From IMG/VR virus record IMGVR_UViG_3300033997_000243, positions 62,001 to 126,000 of that record: a stretch of DNA of 64,000 bases; one strand, written 5' to 3'. A program made the position numbers and the translations under genes. This document shows positions 30,914-46,164 of the stretch, piece by piece; position 1 is the first letter of the stretch, and each line of letters begins with the position of its first letter. Under the pieces are notes generated by a model. It did no database searches, was not told where the DNA came from, and saw only the letters and a program-made list of their open reading frames with translations.

Positions 30914-31339
30914 ATGATGAATATTCTAATACCATTAAAACGCTTTCTTTCCATTAGTAGTGTTGAACCTCGTTCGCTTGATATTTCATCTTTACTTACA
31001 CGCGCTGTTCTCTTAATTAAAGATCGCAGACTCTTAGCCAGTGAACGTGACTCACGAGTTAAAGCGCTTGCACTTTGCGTCATTGAAATGCAAAATATTA
31101 ATGACGCAAAAACAAAGCTTGTTGTGCTGGAAACAGAATCTGGCGATAACATAAGAGCAATCATTGTTCTTGGTACTCAAATTCTTTATGATCCTGCTGA
31201 GAAATTCAGACGTACTCAAATTTACGATCAAAATTCTAGCATTATTTATCGTGCAGGGAAAACAGATATAAAGGCTGAGTATTTTACTTACGTTTCCTAT
31301 ACTCACAAAGCTATTATGTCACGAATTGAGAAGGCTTGA
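30914..31339 (+). CDS. Hypothetical protein (leader-like FLSISS)
   Basis: SD GGAG; 141 aa. Confidence 0.65.
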   Translation: MMNILIPLKRFLSISSVEPRSLDISSLLTRAVLLIKDRRLLASERDSRVKALALCVIEMQNINDAKTKLVVLETESGDNIRAIIVLGTQILYDPAEKFRRTQIYDQNSSIIYRAGKTDIKAEYFTYVSYTHKAIMSRIEKA

Positions 31340-32328
31340 TTATGTCATTACGTTCCATATACGGCGCTGAATTCGATAAATTAGATCAGCAACTTTCCAA
31401 AAACCGTAATCAATATTCACCTGAGATTCTGCAAGCACTGAAAAAAGTTTGCAAAGGAATAACAGGCGATTCTCTTGAAATGGTGGATGAAGAATATCCG
31501 GCTGATGCTCAAAAGTTTGAGCAAGGCGTCGAATGGTTACGTAGGAATTTATTATCTGCAACACAAATTTTATTGTTTATAGGTGAACCTAAATTCCCTG
31601 AAATATGTGTTGTTGATACTTGGTCAGCTGATAAAAATTTCCCTCATTTATATCCTTTCGCTTTTGATGCGCGTAATAAAACCAGAGTTGATGAACTTTA
31701 TGATTCTCAGCGTAAACAAATAAGTTATGAGTCTGTTGATAGGAAAACTCAAGAAACTTATGTTTTCACTCAAAGAGTTTTATCAGAAATTGACTACACA
31801 ACTCTTCGCAGTTATTTGTGCAATCCTGAATTCATTTGTCATCATTACGTAGATCAGTATGTAAATGAAATTAAATATACCGACAGTCAAAATGTTGTGC
31901 GTAGAGCAATAGCACACTGCTGCGGTAAACACGTAGACTTTCCACAGTGGGCAGGATATTGGGGATTGAGTAACGCCAGAGAAATTGAAAATGTCTTAGA
32001 GGCTTTGTATTTACATACAAACTTCGATAAAAATTCTGACAGATATTATGTCGGGAATTTTATTAGACAAGATAGATCCATGAATGATTGGAACATTGTT
32101 TGGATTCTTAACGAGCATGGCCAACGCATTGTAGTAAGAAACGGAAAGCCTTATGTAATGGCTTCTGATCCGAAAGCTCTGTGCAACAGCGTGAATCTTA
32201 ATTTCAAAAACTTTGGCATTTCTGCCTATGATCGTGATGCAATTTACAGAGAAACGTCACGACATCCATTAAAACCATTACTACAAGAATTTGGAGGCTA
32301 TCATGGTCGGAACTTACCTAGCTGTTAA
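31336..32328 (+). CDS. Hypothetical protein
   Basis: 330-aa coupled ORF. Confidence 0.7.
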   Translation: MIMSLRSIYGAEFDKLDQQLSKNRNQYSPEILQALKKVCKGITGDSLEMVDEEYPADAQKFEQGVEWLRRNLLSATQILLFIGEPKFPEICVVDTWSADKNFPHLYPFAFDARNKTRVDELYDSQRKQISYESVDRKTQETYVFTQRVLSEIDYTTLRSYLCNPEFICHHYVDQYVNEIKYTDSQNVVRRAIAHCCGKHVDFPQWAGYWGLSNAREIENVLEALYLHTNFDKNSDRYYVGNFIRQDRSMNDWNIVWILNEHGQRIVVRNGKPYVMASDPKALCNSVNLNFKNFGISAYDRDAIYRETSRHPLKPLLQEFGGYHGRNLPSC

Positions 32329-32758
32329 ACCTGATGCTTTTGCTGTCACAGATATTCAAAAGATTCAACGTGCAATTAAATTTGCAAATCCGATTCCCAA
32401 AGAAAAATTGCATTGTACACTTATGTACAGCAAAGAAAAACAGGGTACAGATTATGTACCTAGTCCGAATGTTCGATATTCGGCTGAAGTAGTTGGTTGC
32501 GATGTTATGGGTGATGTAGGTTCTCCTTGGAGAGCTATAGTTTTAAAGCTTCATTGCCCTGCCTTAGAAAGACGGTTTAACTATGCTAAAACGAAAGGGC
32601 TTGAACATAGCTATCCAGATTTTAAACCACACATTTCACTTGCTTACGGTGACGATGTTGAAGGTTATCTGATTGACCTGAAAAAATATTTGGAGAATAG
32701 TAAGCAAATTACTTTAATCCTCACTAATGAATACAGCGAAGAATTAGTAGACGATTAA
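32303..32758 (+). CDS. acb1: Anti-CBASS nuclease Acb1-like 2H phosphodiesterase (T4 gp57B family)
   Basis: G.Y.A.K, NPIPKEKLHCTLMYS, VL.L....L..RF.YA...G..H.Y.DF.PHISLAY, ...L..EY.E.L..D; two HxT/S motifs; colinear with T4 57B as recalled; SD GGAGG before ATG 32303. Confidence 0.85.
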   Translation: MVGTYLAVKPDAFAVTDIQKIQRAIKFANPIPKEKLHCTLMYSKEKQGTDYVPSPNVRYSAEVVGCDVMGDVGSPWRAIVLKLHCPALERRFNYAKTKGLEHSYPDFKPHISLAYGDDVEGYLIDLKKYLENSKQITLILTNEYSEELVDD

Positions 32759-32759
32759 T

Positions 32760-33407
32760 ATGACAAGAAAAAATGATACATTGCGGCTTAAACGGGCCGC
32801 AACTTATTATCTTGTGGATAAGCTGTATTCTGTCTATGACGAAGTTGGATTAAAATCTGACAATAAATATAGCAAATTAAGAGCCGACATACTTGGCTTA
32901 ACTGTTAGAGGGCAAACAGTTATTGTTGAGGTTAAAAGTTGTTGGGCCGATTTTACTAGCGATACAAAATGGGAATCTTACTTACCATTCGCAAATAAGA
33001 TGTATTTTGCTATATCTATTGAATTGTTTGAAAGCAAACATGGAGCTTATATCAAGCAGCGATTAAAAGCGCATGGTGTAGGTTTAATGGTTGTTACTGA
33101 TGGCGGTAATGTCATTATCAAGCAAAATGCAAAACACAGAAAAGTAGATGGAAGCTTAAAGCGTTGGGTCATTACCAAAATGGCTTGGCGTGGCGGATTC
33201 TGCAAAGCCACTGCTGATAGATCAATGCGTTTTAATCTGCGATCTGTTCAGACTCCACATAGAGAAGTTAATCTTCTTGAATTTCTCACCATGCCAAAAA
33301 GCGAACGCACGATTTATTTTGCAGCTAATCCAAGGTGTGGATTCAAGAAATACATTAACTATCCTTTGCTAGATGCTAAGTTTATTACGGGTGGGATATG
33401 CGAATAG
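32760..33407 (+). CDS. MmcB-family PD-(D/E)XK nuclease / DNA repair protein
   Basis: RADILGL...G..VIVEVKS..ADF.SD.KWE.YLPF...YFA. Confidence 0.8.
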   Translation: MTRKNDTLRLKRAATYYLVDKLYSVYDEVGLKSDNKYSKLRADILGLTVRGQTVIVEVKSCWADFTSDTKWESYLPFANKMYFAISIELFESKHGAYIKQRLKAHGVGLMVVTDGGNVIIKQNAKHRKVDGSLKRWVITKMAWRGGFCKATADRSMRFNLRSVQTPHREVNLLEFLTMPKSERTIYFAANPRCGFKKYINYPLLDAKFITGGICE

Positions 33408-33790
33408 ATCTTGACGCTAATAAGTTTCTATCCGATTGGACAAGAAACAAAACAAATTTAAGTATTATTGCTGTGAAATTTCTTGACGAAGTTAAACCCA
33501 ATTCTGTTCTCAAAGGTTTAAAATCTAAAGCACTGAGATTTGTGCCTGTTCTTCCAAATAAAAATGCACAAATAGAAAAACTTGTCAAGAAGTCAGCTAC
33601 AGTTTTTGCTACACAAGGTAAGCCAAAACCTTTAGGTGAGATATTTAATACGCTCGATGCTGTTTCAGAAAAATTTCCAAAAGAGAGCGTATTTGAGGTA
33701 ATGGTTTTTATTCAAGGCTTCGACGATTCCACGGATGCCGAAACTTACGAGTACGTGTTTACTCTAATGATTAAAAAGGTTGAGAAATGA
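33398..33790 (+). CDS. Hypothetical protein
   Basis: Coupled ORF, 130 aa. Confidence 0.6.
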   Translation: MRIDLDANKFLSDWTRNKTNLSIIAVKFLDEVKPNSVLKGLKSKALRFVPVLPNKNAQIEKLVKKSATVFATQGKPKPLGEIFNTLDAVSEKFPKESVFEVMVFIQGFDDSTDAETYEYVFTLMIKKVEK

Positions 33791-34335
33791 GAATATTAAT
33801 TAGTCTATCCAGTAAGGCTATTCGTATTGAGCAGTCGTTCGGGCCTCTGCATCTTAAAGTACAACGTGCTGACAGAAATATGTATGCAGTAAGTTGGACA
33901 AATAAAATGAAAAATGCTACTGCAAACTTTGCTAAGATGGGACAAAAGAATTATCTTGTGAGTTCAGCTGGCCCTAATCTTCCAGAAACTCAATTAGATA
34001 CGAAAGATTTAAAGCAAGGTCTGCTAATGTTCTTTGGCAATTGCAGTATTTTAAAAGTTGCTGATGAACAAGTATTGGCCGCACGTAAATGGATAGGTGA
34101 AATCATTAAAGATTACGAAGGCGTACATTCTTTGAATATTCGTATTGCTGTTCGTGGTCGTGAGCAAGATAACTTGCACCTACCTGTTACATACGGGCCA
34201 GCTGGTCAAAAGAAGAAGGGTATTTTGCTTTATATTCTGCCGCTCAGCGAGAAATGTCGAGTCATGGTATTGAACGAAGATGGTTCCAAAGGAAATGTCT
34301 TAGAAATGCCTAAAGATCAAATTTGGATAGATTAA
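33787..34335 (+). CDS. Hypothetical protein with shared leader
   Basis: Starts MRILISLSS. Confidence 0.75.
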   Translation: MRILISLSSKAIRIEQSFGPLHLKVQRADRNMYAVSWTNKMKNATANFAKMGQKNYLVSSAGPNLPETQLDTKDLKQGLLMFFGNCSILKVADEQVLAARKWIGEIIKDYEGVHSLNIRIAVRGREQDNLHLPVTYGPAGQKKKGILLYILPLSEKCRVMVLNEDGSKGNVLEMPKDQIWID

Positions 34336-34344
34336 GGGATAGCC

Positions 34345-37140
34345 ATGTTTCCACACATTCAAAAGAAAATAGATCGTTTGCAGTCTTTAGGTATGGTAGC
34401 CACTTGTTCAGTTGGTTGCGGTTCTACAAATGCACTGGTTGGCGGATCTACCTGCAAAATAGAGGGTATTCCAAAACTACATCACAGAGACAATTATATG
34501 TACTGTGAAGAAACTGGTGTTTACTACACTATTGATCGCAATTACATTGGAACCAAACCTGTGATTGCCGCATTACAATTGCTGGATGTTATTGAACCTG
34601 AATTGGCCTGTGCCGAAGATGTAGTCTGCTCTGTGGGTTATTCTCGCTTTTTAGAATCTTGGGTTCAATGGTCTATGCACGGACTTTCAATTCACAGATG
34701 CCGTGAAGATGCTGCCGAATTTAGTAAAATGATTGGCGATTTCAACATTAGTATCGAATCTGAGTTTAATGTTGACAAGTTATTTGCTCAGCGGTTTTTA
34801 ACCAGCCCAAGTATGACTCGTATTCTTGAAACCGTTGCCACTCGCTTGCAGAATCCAATAGCAACAGAAAAACATACTGTTGATCCTGAGCTAAAAGAAA
34901 TTTGCGATCAAGAAGAATCTACTCCAATGGAATTAAAACTTCAGGCGTTACGTGAACGTCGCGGTGAAACTCCTGAAGAATTTGAAAACCTTATTCGTGA
35001 TAACCTGCCAACTCCTGAGCAAAATGAAGTGTTTAAGGAAATGTTTGGCGATTTAGTTTCTTTGTTTGAACAAAAATCTGCACCACAACCTGTTCAAGTT
35101 CGTACTGTTGGTGGCCCATACCATTCTGACCACGGAAAGATAAGTGGCGAACACAAACAGCATAACGTAGATTCAAACAAAAGTGTGTTCAACAATCGTC
35201 GTCAAAGCGGTGATCATATACAGCATGGTGTACCGACTGACGCAAAACCAACTATTCCAACGAAGCCTCAAATGAATCGTTCAAAAATTAGTGGTGAGCA
35301 TATTCAACAAGGCCACCCAAATCCACCTACTCTTTATGTGACAAGTAGCGATTTGCGTTCACAAAGTTCTGACACTGTTCACGATTATACTTGGATGCGT
35401 TACAGTCCACCGAATGGGCGAAGCCGTCACTTCAATAATCACCATCGTCAGCACGAAATGTCTTTGGACATGAATGAAGTGTTTGGTTATCGTGCGATTC
35501 GTGGTGGTGAATTTTATGTTGTGTTTGAAGATAATCGCAACATAAAATTCAAATTAAGTGCGAAAGAAATGGAATCGGTTTTAAAAGTTTGTAAACCATT
35601 CCGTGGTAAAGTTGAAGGTCAGGTTATTCAACGTAAAGAAGTACCAATTCCAAAACTTTCTACTGATCGTCCATTGACACCAAAAGAAAAACAGAAACTT
35701 GCTGAGTTAGAAGCCGCTAAGAAAAAAGTGGAACCTAAGTTAAAGAATTCTGTTATCACTGGTGAGGGCAAAATTGATTTAAGTCGTGTATCTCAAGAAG
35801 AAGCTTTGAGCCGTGATACAACTTATGTTGGTTTCTTTCAATCTTCTGCATTTGCTGATGACTTTGATGTGTTCATGGATGATGATAAAGAAGATTTAGA
35901 AGATGAACTGCTTGACGCAATGCGCCGTACTAAAAATGGTATTCCAGTTTCTTATGTAATGAAGGTTAAAACAAGTTTACCTTGGGTACGCTCATTATTA
36001 GGTACTTCTGGAAAAATGCGTTTACATACTCAAGTTGCACAAAGAATTCTTGCTACACAAAAGCATGAAAAATTAGAAGCTGGAATAAACATAGAGCATT
36101 TTAAAGAACGTCCAGAGCAACCAAATTCAGGAAAGTTCAAACGCAAAGAACCTTTGTATTACGGCAACAGTTTTGCCGTGCTTTCTGAAGTTAAGCAAGC
36201 TATTCTGGCCGGACACTTTACTAAAGCTTTCCGAATCACGCAGATAACAGGTAAGTCGTCGATTAATATTGACAACAAGTTAGCTGCACAAGATCCTAGC
36301 TTTGGTATTGTATCTAATGATCCATCAAACGATGATTTCATGCTGGTACTTGCTGCTCAGAATGACAACCCGCTTTATCAACACGAAGCTGAAGAGATAC
36401 AAGGTCGGTTAGCCAGAGTTTATGGGCCAGCACTTAAATCTATTGTGAAGCATACTAAAACTTCACAAAATGGATCTGGTGTGTTGTTTGTTGTTATTAA
36501 ACTGAATCTTGCTCGTCGTCCTGATGTTGATATTGCGCGTAGCCGTAAGCTTCATAAACTTGTACAAAACATTCTTGAAAATAAACAAGGTGTTGCCAAG
36601 AAAAGTCTGGCTGAATCTGAGTTGTTAAAACTCAGTGAGCAAATGAGTGCCTTACGTAAGAATGCGGCTGCTGATGCAAGTATCTTAAAGGATAAGTTTG
36701 AAACACAACGCACTACCTTAAAGAACAGTATCATCCGTGCTAAAACTATTGCAAACCAACGTACAGTAAATCCAGCAGGTTCTGCTCGTGCTGCAAAAGA
36801 TTTAGTGCGTCATCAAACAGCTTTACAAAGTTTAGATCAGGAATATGAATTTGAACTGACTAATCTTGAGCGCAAAACAGAAGAAGCTGTTGCTAAAATT
36901 CAAAACAAAATCGATGCCATGACATCTGCTAAAGATTTCCGTTATAGCAGCGAATTAGTTTTGAATGTTCCTATCTATGCGATTAAAACAGGAACCGGCA
37001 CTTTTGTTTCGGTTGAAGCTGTTGACTATAGCATTCCAGATGGAACGATTGGTGTGCGTACTGTTCGTGGTAAAGATCGTACTATTACTCAAGTAAAAGA
37101 ACTTTACACATTTAACGGCCATTCTAAGGTTTTCCCTTAG
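34345..37140 (+). CDS. Large multidomain hypothetical (probable virion) protein, 931 aa
   Basis: His-rich repeats; domain shared with 18283 directly after RSQSS; C-terminal coiled coil. Confidence 0.8.
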   Translation: MFPHIQKKIDRLQSLGMVATCSVGCGSTNALVGGSTCKIEGIPKLHHRDNYMYCEETGVYYTIDRNYIGTKPVIAALQLLDVIEPELACAEDVVCSVGYSRFLESWVQWSMHGLSIHRCREDAAEFSKMIGDFNISIESEFNVDKLFAQRFLTSPSMTRILETVATRLQNPIATEKHTVDPELKEICDQEESTPMELKLQALRERRGETPEEFENLIRDNLPTPEQNEVFKEMFGDLVSLFEQKSAPQPVQVRTVGGPYHSDHGKISGEHKQHNVDSNKSVFNNRRQSGDHIQHGVPTDAKPTIPTKPQMNRSKISGEHIQQGHPNPPTLYVTSSDLRSQSSDTVHDYTWMRYSPPNGRSRHFNNHHRQHEMSLDMNEVFGYRAIRGGEFYVVFEDNRNIKFKLSAKEMESVLKVCKPFRGKVEGQVIQRKEVPIPKLSTDRPLTPKEKQKLAELEAAKKKVEPKLKNSVITGEGKIDLSRVSQEEALSRDTTYVGFFQSSAFADDFDVFMDDDKEDLEDELLDAMRRTKNGIPVSYVMKVKTSLPWVRSLLGTSGKMRLHTQVAQRILATQKHEKLEAGINIEHFKERPEQPNSGKFKRKEPLYYGNSFAVLSEVKQAILAGHFTKAFRITQITGKSSINIDNKLAAQDPSFGIVSNDPSNDDFMLVLAAQNDNPLYQHEAEEIQGRLARVYGPALKSIVKHTKTSQNGSGVLFVVIKLNLARRPDVDIARSRKLHKLVQNILENKQGVAKKSLAESELLKLSEQMSALRKNAAADASILKDKFETQRTTLKNSIIRAKTIANQRTVNPAGSARAAKDLVRHQTALQSLDQEYEFELTNLERKTEEAVAKIQNKIDAMTSAKDFRYSSELVLNVPIYAIKTGTGTFVSVEAVDYSIPDGTIGVRTVRGKDRTITQVKELYTFNGHSKVFP

Positions 37141-37148
37141 AAAAAGAA

Positions 37149-37174
37149 GGGGCAGGGAAACTTGCCCCAATTTT
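37149..37174 (+). terminator. Intrinsic terminator (GAAA loop)
   Basis: GGGGCAGG-GAAA-CTTGCCCC then AATTTT. Confidence 0.75.
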
Positions 37175-37189
37175 CGACCGGAGTTTTAT

Positions 37190-37966
37190 ATGCCAGAAAC
37201 TGCACTGCTTCAAATGTTCTTCGATAAAATAAATAATAACAGCATGACTCTACCTACTCTTCCAGATATTGCAATTAAAGTAATGGAAGTTACGGATAGA
37301 CAAGAAGTAAACGCGCAGTTGCTTGTTAGTGTGTTGATGCGAGATAGTGCATTATCTTTGCGACTTATTCGATTAGCAAACAGCGCTCATTTTAATAGAA
37401 GAGTTCCTGTGGAAACTGTACATCAAGCAGTTGTTCGCATAGGATTTACTCAAGTAAAAGCTTTGGTTGTTGCTATGGCTATGGAACAACTTTTTATTTC
37501 GGCTGATCCTTATATATCTAAAATACTGAAAAGTGTTTGGGATGACAGTGTGCGTATTACAGCATACGCGATAGCGCTATCTCAGGTTAGAAAGAATACC
37601 AAAATATTTGAACCTCTTATGTTGTTAGGGGTTACAAGTAGAATAGGGATGTTAGCCATTTTATGTGAAATGGAAAAATCTTTTAATCGTTCAATGTTCA
37701 AAGATTTAGATTTATCTAATCTACAGGTAATTGAAAAATCAGTTACTCTTAAGATTTTTGAAACATGGGATTTTCCAGAAGAATTGCGTACAGCCGTGAC
37801 GAACTATTTTCAAGGTAATGAAGTCGGAATAGCTGAGTACGTAATATTTTCCAGCTTGTATGGAGGCAAACCCAGTGCCGATTATACAAGCCAGCGTTAC
37901 GTGGCTCCAGATAAATTGCCTGAACTTGAAAAAATAGCTGCGGAAGTTAAAGCTATATTTGCTTAA
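37190..37966 (+). CDS. HDOD-domain protein (degenerate HD motif)
   Basis: LPTLPDIA.KV.........L...L.RD.AL..RL.RLANSA.F.....V.TV.QAV.RIG. Confidence 0.9.
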   Translation: MPETALLQMFFDKINNNSMTLPTLPDIAIKVMEVTDRQEVNAQLLVSVLMRDSALSLRLIRLANSAHFNRRVPVETVHQAVVRIGFTQVKALVVAMAMEQLFISADPYISKILKSVWDDSVRITAYAIALSQVRKNTKIFEPLMLLGVTSRIGMLAILCEMEKSFNRSMFKDLDLSNLQVIEKSVTLKIFETWDFPEELRTAVTNYFQGNEVGIAEYVIFSSLYGGKPSADYTSQRYVAPDKLPELEKIAAEVKAIFA

Positions 37967-37974
37967 GGAATTTT

Positions 37975-39642
37975 ATGATTATTTCAATTTCTGCTGTGAG
38001 TAAAAACTCTACAGAATCATTCATCAAACTTGTAGCCAGTTCAATAATGGTGTGTTTGATTGAAGAACCTTTGGGCGCTAAAGTTAAATCTAAGATCCGT
38101 AAGTGGAATTCAGACGCCGAAGAATTTTTGAAAAGATTTCGTATTCCAAGATCAACTTTCAATCCTATAGTAAATGGCTGCTTAAACGACAATGCCGATA
38201 TGGATTGGGATCTTGATGCTTTAATTCGTGTTCTGAAAGAACGTGAAAAAGCTGGTATGCTTACAAAAGAGTTGGATCTTACCAAAGACCATATTGATCT
38301 TTTGAAGTATATGATGGGTATTGTACTTCGTGGGAGTGACGCAAGTTTAAAAAATCTTACTCGTCATATTAGTAAACTTGGTGATCCTGATCTAACAGCT
38401 GTTTTCCTTCACGAAGATGCTGAGCAAAGTAACCAACAAGATTTAGTTGCAGAACTTAATAAATTCTGCCGTAAAATCTTCGGTAAGCCTGAAGCCGACT
38501 TAACTGTCGAAGATAAAAATTCGTTACGTGACAAAAAACCTGAACAGTATAAAGTTTTCCTGAAATTAATGCGGGACATTAACGAAGGGACAAAGCAAGC
38601 AACATTAAGCTTTGTCCGACAAAGTGGTGAAAAGCTTGTTAAGGCTACAGAGTTAGTTCGCTATCTAAAGCAGAACAAAATTCGCAGCAAAGTGCCTGAA
38701 GGATTCAATGGTTACGTTGATGAAAACGGTGCTTATTACAACACGAACAAAGTAAAACTTGATGGTGCTATAACAGGCCGCTTAGAAGCAAATCCTAAGT
38801 ACGATCCTGAATTGGATAACACTTACGTTTTCCTTCACTATCCACTGTTTGGTACTGGGCAGCCTCAACGTATTTACACAGTTGAGTATCGCAAAGAGAA
38901 GGCGGGTAAAAAGTTTAACACTGTTGATGCACTAATAAAAGATCTTCCGGCTGCCCGTAAAAAATGGTTGCATGAATTAAAGACAGGTCATTATGAAGAT
39001 GCTGACACTGTATCTGCTTTAATTCTTGAACTTATTTACGAAACCTCTGCTCGTATTGGTACTGCTGGTCAAAGTGGTCAAGGCATTAGCACGTTGGTAT
39101 GTAAAAACTATACTTCTCGTGGAACCGGATATTTCACATTGAATTATTTGGGCAAGAGTGGCGTTAAACAAATTCATAAAATACATACTAATAAGCCTGA
39201 AGGCAAAATGATGAAGGGGTTATTAGATAGTTTGGTTGAAGGTAAAAAGCCAAATGATTTAATAATGACTGCTCAATTCGGTCGTGCTGTTAAGCATGTG
39301 AATGGTACTTACGTAAATAAATATTTGCGTTCGTTAGGTGTAGATCAAAGCATTACACTTCACAAATTCCGACATGCCCGTGGAACCATTGTTGCAGGTG
39401 CTGTTCTTGATAAAGCTCCGGCTTTCCGTGGTAAATCTGAAGCCGAAATAAATAAATGGTTTATTGAGGCCATGAAAAAAGTTGGTGAAGAATTAGGTCA
39501 TGTTAACGGTGAAAAAGTAACTGCTACTACTGCAATTCAAAACTATATTGATCCAAACTTAATTAAAGAATGGTTCGAGAAAGTTGGTGCTCGTCCGAAC
39601 AGCACTATTCAAAAAGCAATCAACAAAGTAGCTAAGGATTAA
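37975..39642 (+). CDS. DNA topoisomerase IB-like tyrosine transesterase with N-terminal extension and leader
   Basis: ETSARIG (R), G.STL, YLGKSG (K), HKFRH (R), LGH (H), NYIDP (Tyr); starts MIISISAVS. Confidence 0.8.
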   Translation: MIISISAVSKNSTESFIKLVASSIMVCLIEEPLGAKVKSKIRKWNSDAEEFLKRFRIPRSTFNPIVNGCLNDNADMDWDLDALIRVLKEREKAGMLTKELDLTKDHIDLLKYMMGIVLRGSDASLKNLTRHISKLGDPDLTAVFLHEDAEQSNQQDLVAELNKFCRKIFGKPEADLTVEDKNSLRDKKPEQYKVFLKLMRDINEGTKQATLSFVRQSGEKLVKATELVRYLKQNKIRSKVPEGFNGYVDENGAYYNTNKVKLDGAITGRLEANPKYDPELDNTYVFLHYPLFGTGQPQRIYTVEYRKEKAGKKFNTVDALIKDLPAARKKWLHELKTGHYEDADTVSALILELIYETSARIGTAGQSGQGISTLVCKNYTSRGTGYFTLNYLGKSGVKQIHKIHTNKPEGKMMKGLLDSLVEGKKPNDLIMTAQFGRAVKHVNGTYVNKYLRSLGVDQSITLHKFRHARGTIVAGAVLDKAPAFRGKSEAEINKWFIEAMKKVGEELGHVNGEKVTATTAIQNYIDPNLIKEWFEKVGARPNSTIQKAINKVAKD

Positions 39643-39718
39643 CTACATAACATACAGGCTTTGGTAGAGGGACATACTGTAAGCTAATTGGACTTACTTT
39701 ATGATATTGAAAGGGAAT

Positions 39719-40201
39719 ATGTCCCCTACCAATGCAAACTCTATTGTATTGAAAAACACTTTAACTATTTCAGTCGCTACTGATCAGCCTATTCCTATTG
39801 TTTGGGGCGAGGTTGAAGGTCTACCAAATGCAAAACTTTTTACTCATGTTAAAGGTCGTGCTGAAGTAATTTCAAAGATGTCAGGTCGTGTTAAAATCGG
39901 CTTTAAGTTAAATTGTACGTTAACCGGATCTAACGGATCTCCTACAAATCGAGCCGATACAGTTGTTGCTTTTTTATCTATTAACGATATATCAGTTGAT
40001 AGATCTGTCTCTTACGGCTCTTTATATGAGGTAGGTGGAGGATTGACCTCTATTACTGCTGATATTGATAACTTAAGCATTAAACCTAATGATGTCATTA
40101 AACTTTATCTATACAGGTTAGCTAATAATGGAACAATAGTTATGCGTCCGAGCGAAGCATCTATCTCTATTGAACTTACCACGGTGAATCCAAATGGTTA
40201 A
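39719..40201 (+). CDS. Small beta-sandwich structural protein (C1q/BclA-like?)
   Basis: IPIVW...SGRVKIGFKL...IKPNDVIKLYL pattern; SD AAGGG before ATG 39719. Confidence 0.45.
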   Translation: MSPTNANSIVLKNTLTISVATDQPIPIVWGEVEGLPNAKLFTHVKGRAEVISKMSGRVKIGFKLNCTLTGSNGSPTNRADTVVAFLSINDISVDRSVSYGSLYEVGGGLTSITADIDNLSIKPNDVIKLYLYRLANNGTIVMRPSEASISIELTTVNPNG

Positions 40202-40844
40202 AATGACATTCAAGGTGAAAATAAATCCAAACTTAGCGGGAGCCAACTTAGATGGGAGGCCACCGCTTCCAAGTTACGTCGAAGCAATATCTTGGTACTA
40301 TCCTTCATTAAAAGTTTATTCTTATGGCGATGAATACTCAGATATTGTTTGGCCAAATTCTTACGAAAAAGTTTCTAAACCTGCACTTGATAACATAAGA
40401 CTTCAATATGCAAAATATCTGTACATTGAAAGAAGTTTTGAGCAAGCAAATAAAGTGCAGGAAGCCGCAACTGGTTATCATACTGTATCAAAAACAACAA
40501 CTCAAATTCAAACTGATGTATATCGTATGAAGTATGATGATGCACTTGCATACGTCACTTCTTACGAAGCAGCTGAAAATAAAGATAATGTTGAAGTTCC
40601 TCAGCTTCTAGTAAATGAAAGTCAATTGGTAGGTCAAAATCCCTACGAATTAGCATTAGGTATCATAAAGAATTTTAACGGATCTGATTTAAGTTTAAGA
40701 TCTTATTTCGGAACCATTGAAGGAATACGTAGGTTGTTAAAAAAGCGTATTCTTGAAGTAGATTCTTTATCTGCATTGGAAAGTATGCCTTGGGTAACAT
40801 GGCCTAATTATGTCCCATCTACTGAAGTGGATTTGGAAGCTTAG
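40194..40844 (+). CDS. Tail fibre assembly-like protein
   Basis: Y..KY..A..Y......P.LL..E....G.....LA..I.......IEG.RR..KK.I pattern typical of phage fibre chaperones. Confidence 0.5.
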   Translation: MVKMTFKVKINPNLAGANLDGRPPLPSYVEAISWYYPSLKVYSYGDEYSDIVWPNSYEKVSKPALDNIRLQYAKYLYIERSFEQANKVQEAATGYHTVSKTTTQIQTDVYRMKYDDALAYVTSYEAAENKDNVEVPQLLVNESQLVGQNPYELALGIIKNFNGSDLSLRSYFGTIEGIRRLLKKRILEVDSLSALESMPWVTWPNYVPSTEVDLEA

Positions 40845-40846
40845 TC

Positions 40847-41341
40847 ATGAAAATTTTAATCAGTTTGTCTGGCGAGAAATTTTATCGTGGAATAAATGGT
40901 AAATTTTCTACTGACTACCAAAACAAAAGCCATATAATTTGGGTCACATTAAATGCCAAATATGCTTTGCAGTATGGCGATCATTTAATGGAATATGACA
41001 TAAACTTAGGCCAAGGATTTAATTTTGGCTTTCGTACACTTGATGCTCAAGTGACCTTTAGTGAAATCATTTCCAGAATAAAGCAAGGTATCCTAGATTC
41101 CTATAAAAAATTTAACCTTGTATCAAAAGATAAAGCGCTGACACTGTACAATGAGTTAAATTCATTAAATCATGGTGGCCATAAAAAAGTTTGGGAGTGG
41201 TATCAGACTGAGCCAAAACTTGCTGAATTGTTATTGAAGTCTGGATACACTCATATAGATGCACTTGAAGGAAAATACAACGACATAAGAACTGTTGGTA
41301 TTCTTAAAAAGAGCATTATAAAGGGAAACAAATCATTATGA
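40847..41341 (+). CDS. ADP-ribosyltransferase-fold (ART-PolyVal-like) protein with shared leader
   Basis: MKILISLSG leader; FYRG, W.T.N..YA.QYG.....Y.I, L.K.GY..I. Confidence 0.55.
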   Translation: MKILISLSGEKFYRGINGKFSTDYQNKSHIIWVTLNAKYALQYGDHLMEYDINLGQGFNFGFRTLDAQVTFSEIISRIKQGILDSYKKFNLVSKDKALTLYNELNSLNHGGHKKVWEWYQTEPKLAELLLKSGYTHIDALEGKYNDIRTVGILKKSIIKGNKSL

Positions 41342-41601
41342 AAAAGAAGCAACTTTTGCTATCGGAATCCGCTAATGCAAAACAAATAGCTGCACTAACT
41401 ACAACAGCTCCTGAAACACTGCAACTTATAAATGATGCGATTAAGGCAAGTGATAAAAAATTACGCGCTCTTAAGAGTCGAGGCACACAAGCCAGTGAAA
41501 TAATGGCTCATGAAATTGTTGGAAGGATTGATGCACTTAAGATAGTCAAAGAATCTTTGTTGGGTAACAGTGTAGATCTTAAGATGCTTACAAAACAATA
41601 A
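41338..41601 (+). CDS. Small helical protein with leader variant
   Basis: Starts MKKKQLLLSESA. Confidence 0.7.
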   Translation: MKKKQLLLSESANAKQIAALTTTAPETLQLINDAIKASDKKLRALKSRGTQASEIMAHEIVGRIDALKIVKESLLGNSVDLKMLTKQ

Positions 41602-41615
41602 GGCTGGAGTATAAG

Positions 41616-42053
41616 ATGGCTCGAATACAATACGGTATTAGTGATTCTTTTAACGGGTTTCGTGCCAGAAATTTCGTTCTGGACATGCCAAGTTCAACAA
41701 AAGGCATGTTTGAATCTTATGCAAGATCTGTTGCTGAATTCTACTATGATGACGAAATGCTTAAGGTTGAACAACAGGCTAAAAAAGAAGTAATTCGTCG
41801 ATACAGATTGGATGATGAAAGCATATTACTTCAAGACATCGATGACACTATCGCTGGATTGATAGCCGGATTGAATGTAAGTAAAACAAATATGCAAGTT
41901 GCTTTAGCGAGCATTAAAGCAAAAATTGGTGAATACAATCACTTTAATTATATAGGTGTTGAATATCTTGTAGATCGTGGTCTATTCACTAAAAACGGTG
42001 ACGGTTACAAATTTCAATACAGATACAAAACAGCATTCATTGAGTTTATCTGA
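41616..42053 (+). CDS. Hypothetical protein, paralog of 42068
   Basis: SD GGAG; aligns with the next ORF. Confidence 0.7.
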   Translation: MARIQYGISDSFNGFRARNFVLDMPSSTKGMFESYARSVAEFYYDDEMLKVEQQAKKEVIRRYRLDDESILLQDIDDTIAGLIAGLNVSKTNMQVALASIKAKIGEYNHFNYIGVEYLVDRGLFTKNGDGYKFQYRYKTAFIEFI

Positions 42054-42067
42054 GCAGAGGAACAAAC

Positions 42068-42523
42068 ATGGCTATAACAACTGCTCGTGATGTAGTTAAC
42101 GAAAACAATGGAAAGGCACAGCGATACGATGCAATTGAACTTTCCGAAAGCGATAAGCCTAGATTGCAGAGATTTATCGATGCTGAGGCTAAACGCTGGT
42201 ACACGGATTTCAGAACAGATGAATTAGGAAGAATTAACAGAGAACTTAGAGATAAGTTTGGACTGCCTGGTGATGAAGGGCTGCGTCTTTCAATATCAAA
42301 TAGAATAGAATCACTTAATATAAATCAAACGGCAGCAAACCAGAACAACGTAATAGCCTTATCTGATTTACGTGAATATTTACGAAATGTCATTGATGGC
42401 GAGGAAGATGATCCACGTTACGCGAGAATTCGAGATTTAATCGATAACGGTAAAATAACTAAACGTAATAAAAGATTCTTCCTTGAAGGTGAGGGCAAAC
42501 GCATGACGTTTGTATTCATATGA
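42068..42523 (+). CDS. Hypothetical protein, paralog of 41616
   Basis: SD GAGG; internal ELSESD. Confidence 0.7.
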   Translation: MAITTARDVVNENNGKAQRYDAIELSESDKPRLQRFIDAEAKRWYTDFRTDELGRINRELRDKFGLPGDEGLRLSISNRIESLNINQTAANQNNVIALSDLREYLRNVIDGEEDDPRYARIRDLIDNGKITKRNKRFFLEGEGKRMTFVFI

Positions 42524-42840
42524 AAATAAATTTTAAAAATGTCCCATCAGTTGCCATTGATTCTAGGTTTCAAAAAGTATTTAATGCTTATAACAAAGAA
42601 ACTCGTGAATACATGCACTATCTACATAGCGTTGCCGAGAATCCAAGTCTACAGCACGAAAGACCTGCTATAAATACCAACAGGCTTCACAGAATAAGTG
42701 AACTTATTAAGGCAGAACTTAGTAAACGTATTAACATGGATGGTCTTGATTTTTACGAAAACTACGTATGCCGTTTTGATGGAAACAAAAACGCTTTTGT
42801 TCAACCAATTTATAGAATTGTTTTTAAGGACATGAAATGA
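42520..42840 (+). CDS. Hypothetical protein
   Basis: ATGA coupling on both sides. Confidence 0.65.
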   Translation: MKINFKNVPSVAIDSRFQKVFNAYNKETREYMHYLHSVAENPSLQHERPAINTNRLHRISELIKAELSKRINMDGLDFYENYVCRFDGNKNAFVQPIYRIVFKDMK

Positions 42841-43229
42841 AAGTTAAAGTATTTGTAGCTAAGGCCACCAATCTGAGAAATAAACCGTTAAGTGAATACT
42901 CACAGCGCGAAGAGTTACGGAAATTTTGGCCGTTGCGTGATGCTATTGTTGTAGGGAACATGCAGGAAAAGCAACTGATAAATATGATTCGAGATCTTAT
43001 TGACTGGTACTACGATGCTAAAGATGAACGTGACGAAAATTTAGCATTAGCTTGTGTTGAGTTAATGCGTACTCGTGGAGTAACCAGACGCTTACCTCAA
43101 ATTGCGGCAGTAAATGCAGAATTCAACAATTCACCTACTTACAAACATTGGTCAAAGATAACACTGGCAGCCAGTATAGCCGAAAATAAAATCATTTTAG
43201 CTAATCGTAAACCAGAGGACAGATTTTAA
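42837..43229 (+). CDS. Hypothetical protein with leader variant
   Basis: Starts MKVKVFVAKAT. Confidence 0.7.
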   Translation: MKVKVFVAKATNLRNKPLSEYSQREELRKFWPLRDAIVVGNMQEKQLINMIRDLIDWYYDAKDERDENLALACVELMRTRGVTRRLPQIAAVNAEFNNSPTYKHWSKITLAASIAENKIILANRKPEDRF

Positions 43230-43588
43230 TGTTCCGAGCAAAAGTTGTAGATAAGTCTGTTGTATTTTTCTGTGTAGGTTGTAATCTTGAACATGCTGTC
43301 AACATAGATGTTACGAAGAATCCTAAATGGGTATTCAATTTTAATCTGAATACACCTACTCTTAAACCTTCGGTGGATATTAAATCATGTAATCCAGATT
43401 TAAGTCCTGAACTTGAAGAAGAATACGACAGAATTTCTGTATTACCTAATGGAAGAAATTTGGTTTTGAATGATCCACGGTTTAGAACAGTGTGTCATTC
43501 TTTTATTGAAAATGGAAAGATTCGATATTTACCTGATTGTACTCACAGTTACGCAGGTCAAACAGTCGAACTTCCAGCTAAGTATTAG
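43229..43588 (+). CDS. DUF6527-like Cys/His metal-binding protein
   Basis: FFC.GC...H.V.......W.FN.N...PTL.PS...CHSFI..GKI.YL.DCTH..AGQTVELP. Confidence 0.75.
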   Translation: MFRAKVVDKSVVFFCVGCNLEHAVNIDVTKNPKWVFNFNLNTPTLKPSVDIKSCNPDLSPELEEEYDRISVLPNGRNLVLNDPRFRTVCHSFIENGKIRYLPDCTHSYAGQTVELPAKY

Positions 43589-43627
43589 ATCTGTAATCGT
43601 GCAGATCTTTATCTGGAGAAAGTAAAG

Positions 43628-44146
43628 ATGGAAATACAACTAAACTACGTTCAGCAAGCAACACTTGCGTACATAAATGCCTGCCGTGAAAGTTCGATGA
43701 AAATTTCGGAAGCCATTCATGTAAAAGCGAATGAAGATGGTTCTTATTCACCTATTGAATTTAACGCCTCTGATGTAGCCGCGTTTCGAGTTATTGGATT
43801 ACGCGCCCCACAAAGAGCCGGAATGTCAATTTTTCAGGAATGGTTCTGTTATGAAGAATCTAAGAAATTGGAGCTTGAAAATAGTTCTGAACGAATTTTG
43901 TGGATAACGACTCAGGATAACGACTTTTCTTTACCTAGTTTTGTCGATTACTACAAAGTCAGACAGCCAGCAGAATATGGACGTTTGTGTCAGTCGTTAA
44001 AGAAAGCAGAGTTTAAAAAGTATCGTTGGATAATTATCGATCAACATACTTGGATTTGTGGACATGATATACATTTGGAAAAATTAATTTCAGCTGTGTA
44101 TGATGGAAATAACACAAAGCAATTCTTTTTAACATTCTCAAGTTGA
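43628..44146 (+). CDS. Hypothetical protein
   Basis: SD GGAG; last gene of the + arm. Confidence 0.65.
   Translation: MEIQLNYVQQATLAYINACRESSMKISEAIHVKANEDGSYSPIEFNASDVAAFRVIGLRAPQRAGMSIFQEWFCYEESKKLELENSSERILWITTQDNDFSLPSFVDYYKVRQPAEYGRLCQSLKKAEFKKYRWIIIDQHTWICGHDIHLEKLISAVYDGNNTKQFFLTFSS

Positions 44147-44240: not shown

Positions 44241-46164
<1,924 letters not shown>

What the first reader, a model, noticed from the sequence alone, without database searches (positions are those of the whole stretch)
37190..37966. Phage-encoded HDOD signalling protein with the HD motif lost
Seen: a clear HDOD N-terminus, but the usual GLLHDIG segment reads LGVTSRIG. It sits behind its own terminator, directly before the topoisomerase. 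Established: HDOD proteins are bacterial signal-transduction components linked to chemotaxis, motility and c-di-GMP, and I do not recall them as typical phage genes. Inference: a host-derived, non-catalytic decoy that could rewire motility or biofilm signalling during infection.
Basis: partly seen in the sequence, partly recalled or inferred. Interest (0 to 1): 0.6.

Follow-up and report, generated by a model that had tools for sequence, protein, structure and literature searches.

The report
Jumbo-phage HDOD protein without metal site
A complete 320-kb jumbo phage and at least six related phages carry a conserved copy of a bacterial single-domain HDOD signalling protein that has lost every metal-binding residue, so it probably acts by binding a host protein rather than by catalysis, but what it does is untested.

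Summary
Window 37190-37966 (+) encodes a 258-aa single-domain HDOD protein (Pfam E 8.6e-34; model TM 0.85 to PDB 3i7a). The HD segment reads LGVTSRIG, and all six canonical metal-ligand positions are replaced.

The contig is not chimeric: it is a 319.5-kb viral record with terminal repeats. The order large protein / HDOD / type IB topoisomerase recurs in seven phage lineages with 42-50% HDOD identity.

The nearest cellular relatives (29-39% identity) are a single-copy, roughly 280-aa standalone HDOD family of Alteromonadales-type gammaproteobacteria. That family is already degenerate (HN, YN or FN). Loss of catalysis is therefore mostly inherited; only the last His was lost in the phage clade, which then fixed its own set (D119, S/C150, R151, E182, Y/F206, F/Y207).

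HDOD is rare in phages: no PHROG, no BFVD fold match, and 5 phages among 50,697 records.

Best reading, inferred: a non-enzymatic competitor of, or substitute for, the host's HDOD protein in a dosage-sensitive pathway, most plausibly motility. The precedents are PSPTO_4229 and SadB. Anti-defence and topoisomerase-partner roles are not excluded.

The parts
37190..37966 (+). HDOD gene: 258-aa single-domain protein
   Evidence: Pfam PF08668 E 8.6e-34. PDB 3i7a by sequence, E 7.9e-34. AF2 model pLDDT 84.6, Foldseek TM 0.85 to 3i7a.
37250..37804 (+). HDOD domain proper (residues 21-205), starting with the LPTLP motif (37250-37264)
   Evidence: Pfam envelope 21-205 = profile positions 1-192 of 196. 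L21, P22, T23 and P25 are invariant in alignment A1.
37472..37501 (+). AMAMEQLFIS motif (residues 95-104), the signature of the 3i7a-like subfamily, shared by the phage and bacterial clades and absent from canonical HDODs
   Evidence: Invariant columns A95-S104 in A2. Shared-conservation table.
37625..37648 (+). Degenerate HD segment LGVTSRIG. S150 and R151 (37637-37642) replace the His and Asp.
   Evidence: Alignments to 3i7a and to canonical HDODs. Ligand table: phage clade S/C + R, bacteria H/Y/F + N, canonical H + D.
37149..37168 (+). GC-rich intergenic hairpin just upstream of the HDOD gene (weak U tail)
   Evidence: dG -16.5, z -2.7. Hairpins of different sequence stand at the same place in L003, L004, L090 and L088. 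Called as terminator-like only on the - strand.
37180..37183 (+). Shine-Dalgarno-like GGAG, 6 nt before the ATG
   Evidence: Read directly from the sequence.
37975..39642 (+). Type IB topoisomerase-like gene (555 aa), 8 nt downstream, always adjacent to the HDOD gene in relatives
   Evidence: Pfam Topoisom_I E 1.1e-15, phrog_23460 E 7.6e-121. 66-70% identical in relatives. Adjacency seen.
34345..37140 (+). Upstream 931-aa protein of the conserved block (KMPT-N domain; weak Tad6-like N-terminal segment)
   Evidence: Pfam KMPT-N E 3.5e-7, Tad6 E 0.0039. The orthologue in L090 carries a recorded Tad6 hit.

Best explanation
The gene encodes a non-enzymatic, all-helical, single-domain HDOD protein. 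An ancestor of this jumbo-phage clade captured it from a gammaproteobacterial host lineage, and it has been kept under purifying selection since.

Its cellular parent is a single-copy, standalone, roughly 280-aa HDOD family (structural representative PDB 3i7a). That family is itself a pseudo-enzyme.

The phage version keeps the subfamily-specific polar residues: R70, R83, Q88, E99, Q100, S104, E160, E162 and the AMAMEQLFIS motif. It has replaced the former metal site with a fixed set of its own (D119, S/C150, R151, E182, Y/F206, F/Y207). Against the bacterial family it also lacks about five residues after the long helix 107-133 and has a shorter C-terminal region.

Inferred mechanism: once made in the infected cell, it binds the same host partner as the cellular HDOD protein and perturbs a dosage-sensitive HDOD-dependent pathway by competition or substitution. 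The most plausible target is flagellar motility, chemotaxis or surface behaviour.

Shown: identity, fold, loss of ligands, origin, conservation and rarity in phages. Inferred: protein binding, the pathway, and the direction of the effect.
For: Identity and fold:
- Pfam HDOD E 8.6e-34.
- 3i7a by sequence E 7.9e-34.
- AF2 model pLDDT 84.6; TM 0.85 to 3i7a, 0.62-0.66 to SadB and 3hc1.
- Atlas neighbours are all HDOD.

No metal site:
- The six positions that are H, H, D, H, H, H in canonical HDODs are D, S/C, R, E, Y/F, F/Y in all 8 phage-clade sequences.
- The bacterial family keeps only one of them, and that His in only 55 of its 89 sequences.
- 3HC1 binds two Fe through five His and one Asp (PMC12075610).

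Origin:
- More than 549 bacterial relatives. The best 80 are all roughly 280 aa and 28-39% identical, from Rheinheimera, Pseudoalteromonas, Colwellia, Thalassotalea, Shewanella and Catenovulum.
- There is one strong orthologue per genome plus weaker paralogues.
- The phage clade is monophyletic (support 100), has a stem of 1.26-1.75, and is sister to that bacterial clade.

A real phage gene:
- Complete viral record with terminal repeats.
- Same block in L002, L003, L004, L088, L090, L096/L097 and L098.
- In the patch that differs from the 99% relative, 12 synonymous against 3 non-synonymous codon changes.

Shared subfamily-specific residues.

Precedent for non-catalytic, protein-binding, dosage-sensitive HDODs:
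- PSPTO_4229 (273 aa, standalone): deletion and overexpression both reduce swimming, and R84A/R85A abolishes the effect (PMC11813219).
- SadB: an adaptor for AmrZ proteolysis, with no c-di-GMP binding and pocket mutations without effect (PMC12075610).
- PFL_0554, PFL_5871, GsmR and Cj0248 are all linked to motility (PMC11004494).
Against: - No partner, ligand or phenotype is known for the 3i7a-like cellular family, and its bacterial gene neighbourhood is not conserved, so the pathway is extrapolated from other HDOD proteins.
- The host is unknown. That it carries the cellular orthologue is inferred only from the donor clade.
- The phage clade's own fixed pocket residues (D119, R151, E182) could mean a new ligand or a new function rather than mimicry.
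- I could not obtain the PSPTO_4229 sequence. Equating its R84/R85 with R83 here rests on domain offsets only.
- The gene sits among DNA-metabolism and anti-defence genes, not among signalling genes.
Confidence: 0.45

Rival explanations
1. Anti-defence protein. The ligand-less HD-like pocket, or the protein's surface, binds a nucleotide immune signal as a sponge, or it blocks a host defence protein, as part of a counter-defence gene block.
For: Acb1 (anti-CBASS phosphodiesterase, Pfam E 1.4e-27) lies 4.4 kb upstream in the same conserved block. The adjacent 931-aa protein has a weak Tad6-like segment (E 0.0039), with a recorded Tad6 hit in the L090 orthologue. HDOD is one of the faster-evolving genes of the block: 43-48% against 66-70% for the topoisomerase. 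The phage clade has its own invariant charged pocket residues D119, R151 and E182.
Against: No similarity to any known sponge or inhibitor. The parent is a conserved, vertically inherited, single-copy cellular protein, not a defence component. The block also holds plain DNA-metabolism genes (MmcB-like, topoisomerase). The Tad6 match in the window is below Pfam's cut-off. No binding was tested.
Confidence: 0.15
2. Accessory subunit or regulator of the phage's type IB topoisomerase or of phage DNA metabolism, made from the same transcript.
For: The HDOD stop and the topoisomerase start are 2-10 nt apart in every lineage, and both follow a conserved hairpin.
Against: The same topoisomerase family occurs without HDOD in PaBG, Lu11, phiRSL1 and others, and in Phage NCTB the two genes lie 55 kb apart. 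Tight spacing is general in this genome. HDOD evolves much faster than the topoisomerase.
Confidence: 0.1
3. A phage-internal or host-takeover regulator unrelated to the cellular orthologue's pathway. Examples are an adaptor that hands host proteins to a protease, or a factor acting on transcription or RNA turnover. Here the HDOD fold is only a reused scaffold.
For: Long stem branch, and 14 positions conserved in both clades but with different residues. SadB shows that an HDOD can serve as a proteolysis adaptor (PMC12075610).
Against: The subfamily-specific polar residues are retained, which argues for a retained interaction. Nothing points to a specific alternative target.
Confidence: 0.15
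4. A still-active hydrolase that uses a non-canonical site.
For: PDB entries of this family are titled 'putative metal-dependent phosphohydrolase'. These titles are depositors' names, not assay results.
Against: None of the six metal ligands is present. The former HD position is S/C + R.
Confidence: 0.03

Closest known systems
PDB 3i7a (Shewanella amazonensis YP_926882.1) and its roughly 280-aa standalone HDOD orthologues in Alteromonadales-type gammaproteobacteria
   Same: Same single-domain architecture and fold (TM 0.85; sequence E 7.9e-34). Same LPTLP start, AMEQLF(I/V)S motif and L-x-E-x-E motif. Same lack of most metal ligands.
   Different: Only 29-39% identical. The phage protein is about 20 residues shorter. 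HN/YN/FN becomes SR/CR. W at the fourth ligand position becomes Y/F. It is phage-encoded, in a fixed phage gene block.
PSPTO_4229 of Pseudomonas syringae DC3000 (273-aa standalone HDOD motility regulator; PMC11813219)
   Same: Same size and domain span (HDOD at 23-210 against 21-205 here). No other domain. It acts through dosage and predicted protein contacts. An invariant Arg (R83) stands at about the position of its essential R84/R85.
   Different: It is a cellular gene.
SadB of Pseudomonas aeruginosa (PDB 9qzk; PMC12075610)
   Same: A degenerate HDOD with too few His residues for metal binding. It works as a protein adaptor, binds no c-di-GMP, and its pocket mutations have no effect. Fold match TM 0.62.
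   Different: SadB has an additional N-terminal YbaK-like domain that it needs for function, and is 457 aa long. The phage protein is HDOD only.
HDOD genes of other phages (Phage NCTB, Microcystis phage MaAM05, Dolichospermum phage Dfl-JY45, Pseudomonas phages Y10 and YMC12/01/R24)
   Same: Phage-encoded HDOD domains. NCTB's belongs to the same bacterial subfamily, and NCTB is the closest sequenced relative of this phage (sheath 45.6% identity).
   Different: Each sits in a different gene context. MaAM05 keeps all six ligands and the others keep one to four. NCTB's copy groups with Catenovulum and Algibacillus rather than with this clade, although a single origin is not rejected (p-AU 0.065).

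Membership tests
HDOD domain family (Pfam PF08668) | Sequence match to the family profile above the curated cut-off | tested here: met
   117.2 bits against a cut-off of 22.9, E 8.6e-34, profile positions 1-192 of 196.
HDOD domain family (Pfam PF08668) | All-helical HD-like fold that superposes on solved HDOD structures | tested here: met
   Model pLDDT 84.6, 14 helices. Foldseek hits: 3i7a TM 0.85, 3hc1 0.66, 3m1t 0.62, SadB 0.62; the top 12 hits are all HDOD entries.
HDOD domain family (Pfam PF08668) | Conserved N-terminal L-P-T/x-L-P motif and the N-S and W landmarks | tested here: met
   L21, P22, T23, P25, N64, S65, W117, G153 and W193 are invariant across A1.
Metal-binding (canonical) HDOD / HD superfamily phosphohydrolase (PF01966) | The H...HD...H...HH metal ligands (five His and one Asp bind two Fe in 3HC1) | tested here: not met
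   The positions read D119, S150, R151, E182, Y206, F207. No PF01966 hit.
3i7a-like standalone HDOD subfamily of gammaproteobacteria | Subfamily signature AMEQLF(I/V)S and L-x-E-x-E, invariant R70 and R83, single domain of about 280 aa | tested here: met
   All signature residues are present. Length is 258 aa against about 280. The clade is sister to, not inside, the bacterial clade.
3i7a-like standalone HDOD subfamily of gammaproteobacteria | Same cellular partner or function as the bacterial orthologues | not testable with these tools
   The function of the bacterial family is unknown, and its gene neighbourhood is not conserved.
c-di-GMP signalling component | Binding or turnover of c-di-GMP | not testable with these tools
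   No GGDEF, EAL, HD-GYP or PilZ domain. SadB's HDOD does not bind c-di-GMP (PMC12075610).
Phage anti-defence proteins (sponges, Acb/Tad families) | Homology to a known anti-defence family | tested here: not met
   Pfam gives HDOD only; PHROGs and NCBIfam give nothing. Acb1 and a Tad6-like segment occur in neighbouring genes, not in this one.

The most novel reading that the evidence does not exclude
The phage-specific HDOD clade is a new kind of counter-defence or host-takeover pseudo-enzyme. An HD-fold scaffold has had its metal site rebuilt into a charged pocket (D119, R151, E182). That pocket either sequesters a nucleotide immune or second-messenger signal, or acts as an adaptor that diverts a host regulator, within a conserved Acb1 / Tad6-like / HDOD block of jumbo phages.
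Probability: 0.12. Interest if true: 0.8.

Novelty: new variant of a known kind. Interest (0 to 1): 0.5.

Why it matters
HDOD is a widespread bacterial signalling domain whose molecular function is still largely unknown. The few studied members point to dosage-sensitive, non-catalytic control of motility and surface behaviour.

A phage clade has kept a stripped-down copy for a long time. It retains the subfamily's conserved polar residues but has no metal site. This works as a natural experiment: whatever the phage protein binds is likely to be the partner of the uncharacterised cellular family as well.

It would also add signalling-domain mimicry to the ways jumbo phages manipulate marine gammaproteobacteria. 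The donor clade gives a host clue for an uncultured 320-kb phage.

Tried and rejected
- Chimeric contig: rejected. The record is a complete virus with terminal repeats, GC is uniform, and the same block occurs in seven lineages.
- Recent host capture: rejected. No bacterial relative is above 39% identity, and the stem branch is long.
- HD loss as a phage innovation: rejected for five of the six ligands.
- PaBG_00085, the gene before the topoisomerase in phage PaBG, as a cryptic HDOD: rejected (hhalign probability 1%, no Pfam hit).
- Conserved bacterial neighbourhood as a functional clue: none found.
- Complex prediction of topoisomerase plus HDOD: no verdict (score 0.00, controls not run). This is not evidence either way.
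I therefore have no read-level or expression data, and read laying was not used.
- The search for related loci with the diverse alignment A1 failed because no block was conserved enough.
- The class-wide genome search gave no taxon labels, so it shows only that 111 of 301 sampled genomes of G001's class (G001 is a Pseudoalteromonas phenolica genome, so presumably Gammaproteobacteria) have a match at E <= 1e-20.
- The AU test of a single origin for this clade plus NCTB was inconclusive (p 0.0645). The first attempt on 105 rows did not finish.
- The large representative-protein search was not run. The family assignment was not open, and that library carries no context.
- NCBIfam has no model for this protein or for its bacterial orthologue.

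Full report
**1. What is there**

The ORF at window 37190-37966 (+) starts with ATG, six bases after a GGAG, and encodes 258 residues.
- Pfam places residues 21-205 on HDOD (PF08668): E 8.6e-34, 117 bits against a cut-off of 22.9. No other domain is found.
- PHROGs and NCBIfam have no family for it.
- By sequence, the best solved structure is 3i7a, a 281-aa protein of Shewanella amazonensis (E 7.9e-34). Other HDOD entries follow.
- An AlphaFold2 model built on alignment A2 is all-helical (pLDDT 84.6, pTM 0.80).
- The model superposes on 3i7a with TM 0.85, and on 3hc1, 3m1t and SadB (9qzk) with TM 0.62-0.66. Every significant hit is an HDOD entry.
- The ESM Atlas neighbours are HDOD clusters of Pseudomonadota only.

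**2. The HD motif**

The segment that reads GLLHDxG in canonical HDODs and GLVHNIG in 3i7a reads LGVTSRIG here (residues 146-153).

I tabulated all six positions that are H, H, D, H, H, H in canonical HDODs. According to PMC12075610, five His and one Asp bind two iron ions in 3HC1.
- Query: D119, S150, R151, E182, Y206, F207.
- All eight members of the phage clade carry the same kinds of residue: D/N, S/C, R, E, Y/F, F/Y.
- The bacterial roughly 280-aa family keeps only the His of the HD pair, in 55 of its 89 sequences; the rest have Y or F. That residue is followed by N. The other positions hold K, S/A, W and A/S.

The phage lineage lost the last His and fixed a charged set of its own.

**3. 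It is a phage gene, not host contamination**

The window lies in a 319,518-bp viral record with direct terminal repeats, rated complete, and this record holds one HDOD gene. The window carries a tail sheath, baseplate genes and a GroEL-type chaperonin. GC content is even.

The word search of 5.8 billion proteins found six relatives at 45-50% identity and 253-271 aa. IMG/VR added a 99% copy and a 43% copy, on 214-kb and 287-kb viral contigs. Every relative whose contig could be read shows the same order: a protein of about 930 aa, then HDOD, then a 555-aa type IB topoisomerase-like protein. Acb1 and an MmcB-like nuclease lie upstream wherever the contig reaches that far.

Identities between the window and these relatives:

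| Gene | Identity |
|---|---|
| HDOD | 43-48% |
| Topoisomerase | 66-70% |
| MmcB-like | 59-65% |
| Acb1 | 50-59% |
| Large upstream protein | 36-50% |

Against the 99% relative, the only differing patch in the gene (codons 205-248) has 12 synonymous and 3 non-synonymous codon changes. That is the pattern of a gene under purifying selection.

**4. Origin**

A scan of one genome per species found more than 549 bacterial relatives. The best 80 are all about 280 aa and 28-39% identical. They come from Rheinheimera, Pseudoalteromonas, Colwellia, Thalassotalea, Shewanella, Catenovulum, Psychrobium and allies.
- Three such genomes each hold one strong orthologue (E 1e-80 to 1e-111) plus weaker HDOD paralogues.
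- The bacterial part of the tree follows taxonomy.
- The bacterial gene neighbourhood is not conserved.
- The phage clade is monophyletic (SH-aLRT 100), on a stem of 1.26 (LG) or 1.75 (LG+C20) changes per site. It is sister to the whole Alteromonadales-type clade; the union has support 87 and 99 in the two trees. It is not nested in any genus.

The capture is therefore old. The donor was a gammaproteobacterium near that group, but long-branch effects limit precision. This is a host clue, not a host assignment.

**5. How common is HDOD in phages**

- No PHROG family matches.
- No BFVD structure matches at E <= 0.001.
- Three tblastn searches of 50,697 phage records, using the query, a canonical HDOD and a bacterial orthologue, find five distinct phages: Phage NCTB, Microcystis phage MaAM05, Dolichospermum phage Dfl-JY45, and Pseudomonas phages Y10 and YMC12/01/R24.
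- Their ligand sets differ: MaAM05 keeps all six, the others keep one to four.

NCTB is the closest sequenced relative of this phage (tail sheath 45.6%, topoisomerase 31.8%). Its 282-aa HDOD belongs to the same bacterial subfamily (41% to a Pseudoalteromonas orthologue, motif GMVHLIG). It sits among nucleotide-metabolism genes, 55 kb from NCTB's topoisomerase. Under the mixture model it groups with Catenovulum and Algibacillus (support 100), which suggests a second capture. The AU test does not reject a single origin (delta lnL 12.7, p 0.0645).

Phage PaBG has the MmcB-to-topoisomerase block without HDOD.

**6. Regulation and surroundings**

A GC-rich hairpin stands between the upstream gene and HDOD (37149-37168, dG -16.5, z -2.7). 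Hairpins of unrelated sequence stand at the same place in four other lineages (dG -13 to -20), all with weak U tails. The consensus scan calls the window's hairpin a terminator only on the minus strand. It is thus a conserved structural element, possibly a leaky terminator or an RNA-end stabiliser. HDOD and the topoisomerase gene, 2-10 nt apart in all lineages, are probably co-transcribed.

**7. How it most likely works**

Shown: a ligand-less HDOD scaffold of cellular origin, conserved in a phage clade.

Inferred: it acts through protein contacts. It retains polar residues that are conserved in the bacterial orthologues but not in canonical HDODs: R70, R83, Q88, E99, Q100, S104, E160 and E162. 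Fourteen other positions are conserved in both clades with different residues, and the C-terminal part is shorter.

Published work shows what such proteins can do.
- PSPTO_4229 is a 273-aa standalone HDOD with its domain at 23-210. It reduces swimming both when deleted and when overexpressed, and R84A/R85A abolishes the effect (PMC11813219).
- SadB's degenerate HDOD is an adaptor for AmrZ proteolysis and does not bind c-di-GMP (PMC12075610).
- Several other HDOD genes affect motility (PMC11004494).

A phage-made paralogue could thus compete with, or stand in for, the host protein and shift a dosage-sensitive pathway. By domain offsets, R83 here would match R84/R85 of PSPTO_4229. I could not obtain that sequence, so this remains a lead.

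**8. Rivals**

- An anti-defence role is suggested by Acb1 (E 1.4e-27) and by a weak Tad6-like segment in neighbouring genes, and by the fast evolution of HDOD. There is no homology to a known inhibitor.
- A topoisomerase-partner role is suggested only by adjacency. The complex prediction gave no verdict, and other phages have the enzyme without HDOD.
- A residual enzymatic role is unlikely given the ligand table.

**9. Limits**

The host is not identified. The large representative-protein search was not run because the family assignment was not in doubt.

**10. Verdict**

The gene is a new, phage-specific variant of a known domain family. It is of moderate interest because it offers an experimental handle on the unknown function of standalone HDOD proteins.

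Noticed in passing
window 32291-32758 (+): Clear homologue of the anti-CBASS phosphodiesterase Acb1 (Pfam PF23474 E 1.4e-27; PHROG 755, labelled 'RNA ligase'). It is conserved in the same block in all relatives whose contigs reach that far.
   Followed up: partly
window 34345-37140 (+): 931-aa protein directly upstream of HDOD, with a KMPT-N domain (E 3.5e-7, residues 348-411) and a weak Tad6-like (type I Thoeris inhibitor) segment at residues 59-110 (E 0.0039, below cut-off). The orthologue in L090 has a recorded Tad6 hit. It evolves fast (36-50% identity between lineages).
   Followed up: partly
window 37975-39642 (+): 555-aa type IB topoisomerase-like protein with an about 300-residue N-terminal extension and a C-terminal NYIDP motif. 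PHROG 23460 is labelled 'unknown function'. It is shared at 29-33% identity with jumbo phages PaBG, Lu11, NCTB, HRDY3 and phiRSL1, and with Xanthomonas, Erwinia and Achromobacter jumbo phages.
   Followed up: partly
window 32760-33407 (+): MmcB-like PD-(D/E)XK nuclease (Pfam E 1.7e-14). The MmcB-to-topoisomerase arrangement is also present in Pseudomonas phage PaBG.
   Followed up: partly
window 44241-45848 (-), and about 44 kb generally: Phage-encoded GroEL-type chaperonin (Cpn60_TCP1 E 2.8e-72). Coding strand and GC skew both flip at about 44 kb.
   Followed up: no
window 37141-37189; L003 5954-6000; L004 7947-8000; L090 5940-6000; L088 5960-6000: Intergenic GC-rich hairpins at the same position but with unrelated stem sequences and no strong U tail. 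This may be the phage's own terminator or RNA-processing style.
   Followed up: partly
window 31190-43960 against L002 (IMGVR_UViG_3300024308_000188): The 99%-identical relative differs in discrete patches: the HDOD C-terminus, parts of the 931-aa gene, and the three genes after the topoisomerase (84-94% identity). Between patches the sequences are 100% identical. This looks like mosaic recombination between co-circulating phages.
   Followed up: partly
L005 5980-6828 (Phage NCTB, LT598654.1 127011-127859): The closest sequenced relative of this phage carries its own 282-aa HDOD of the same bacterial subfamily (motif GMVHLIG), annotated only as a hypothetical protein. It sits among thymidylate synthase, Dam methylase and DHFR genes.
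   Followed up: yes
L092 2468-3352 (Microcystis phage MaAM05): A gene annotated 'ribonuclease Y' is in fact a 294-aa canonical HDOD protein that keeps all six metal ligands. The annotation is probably wrong.
   Followed up: partly
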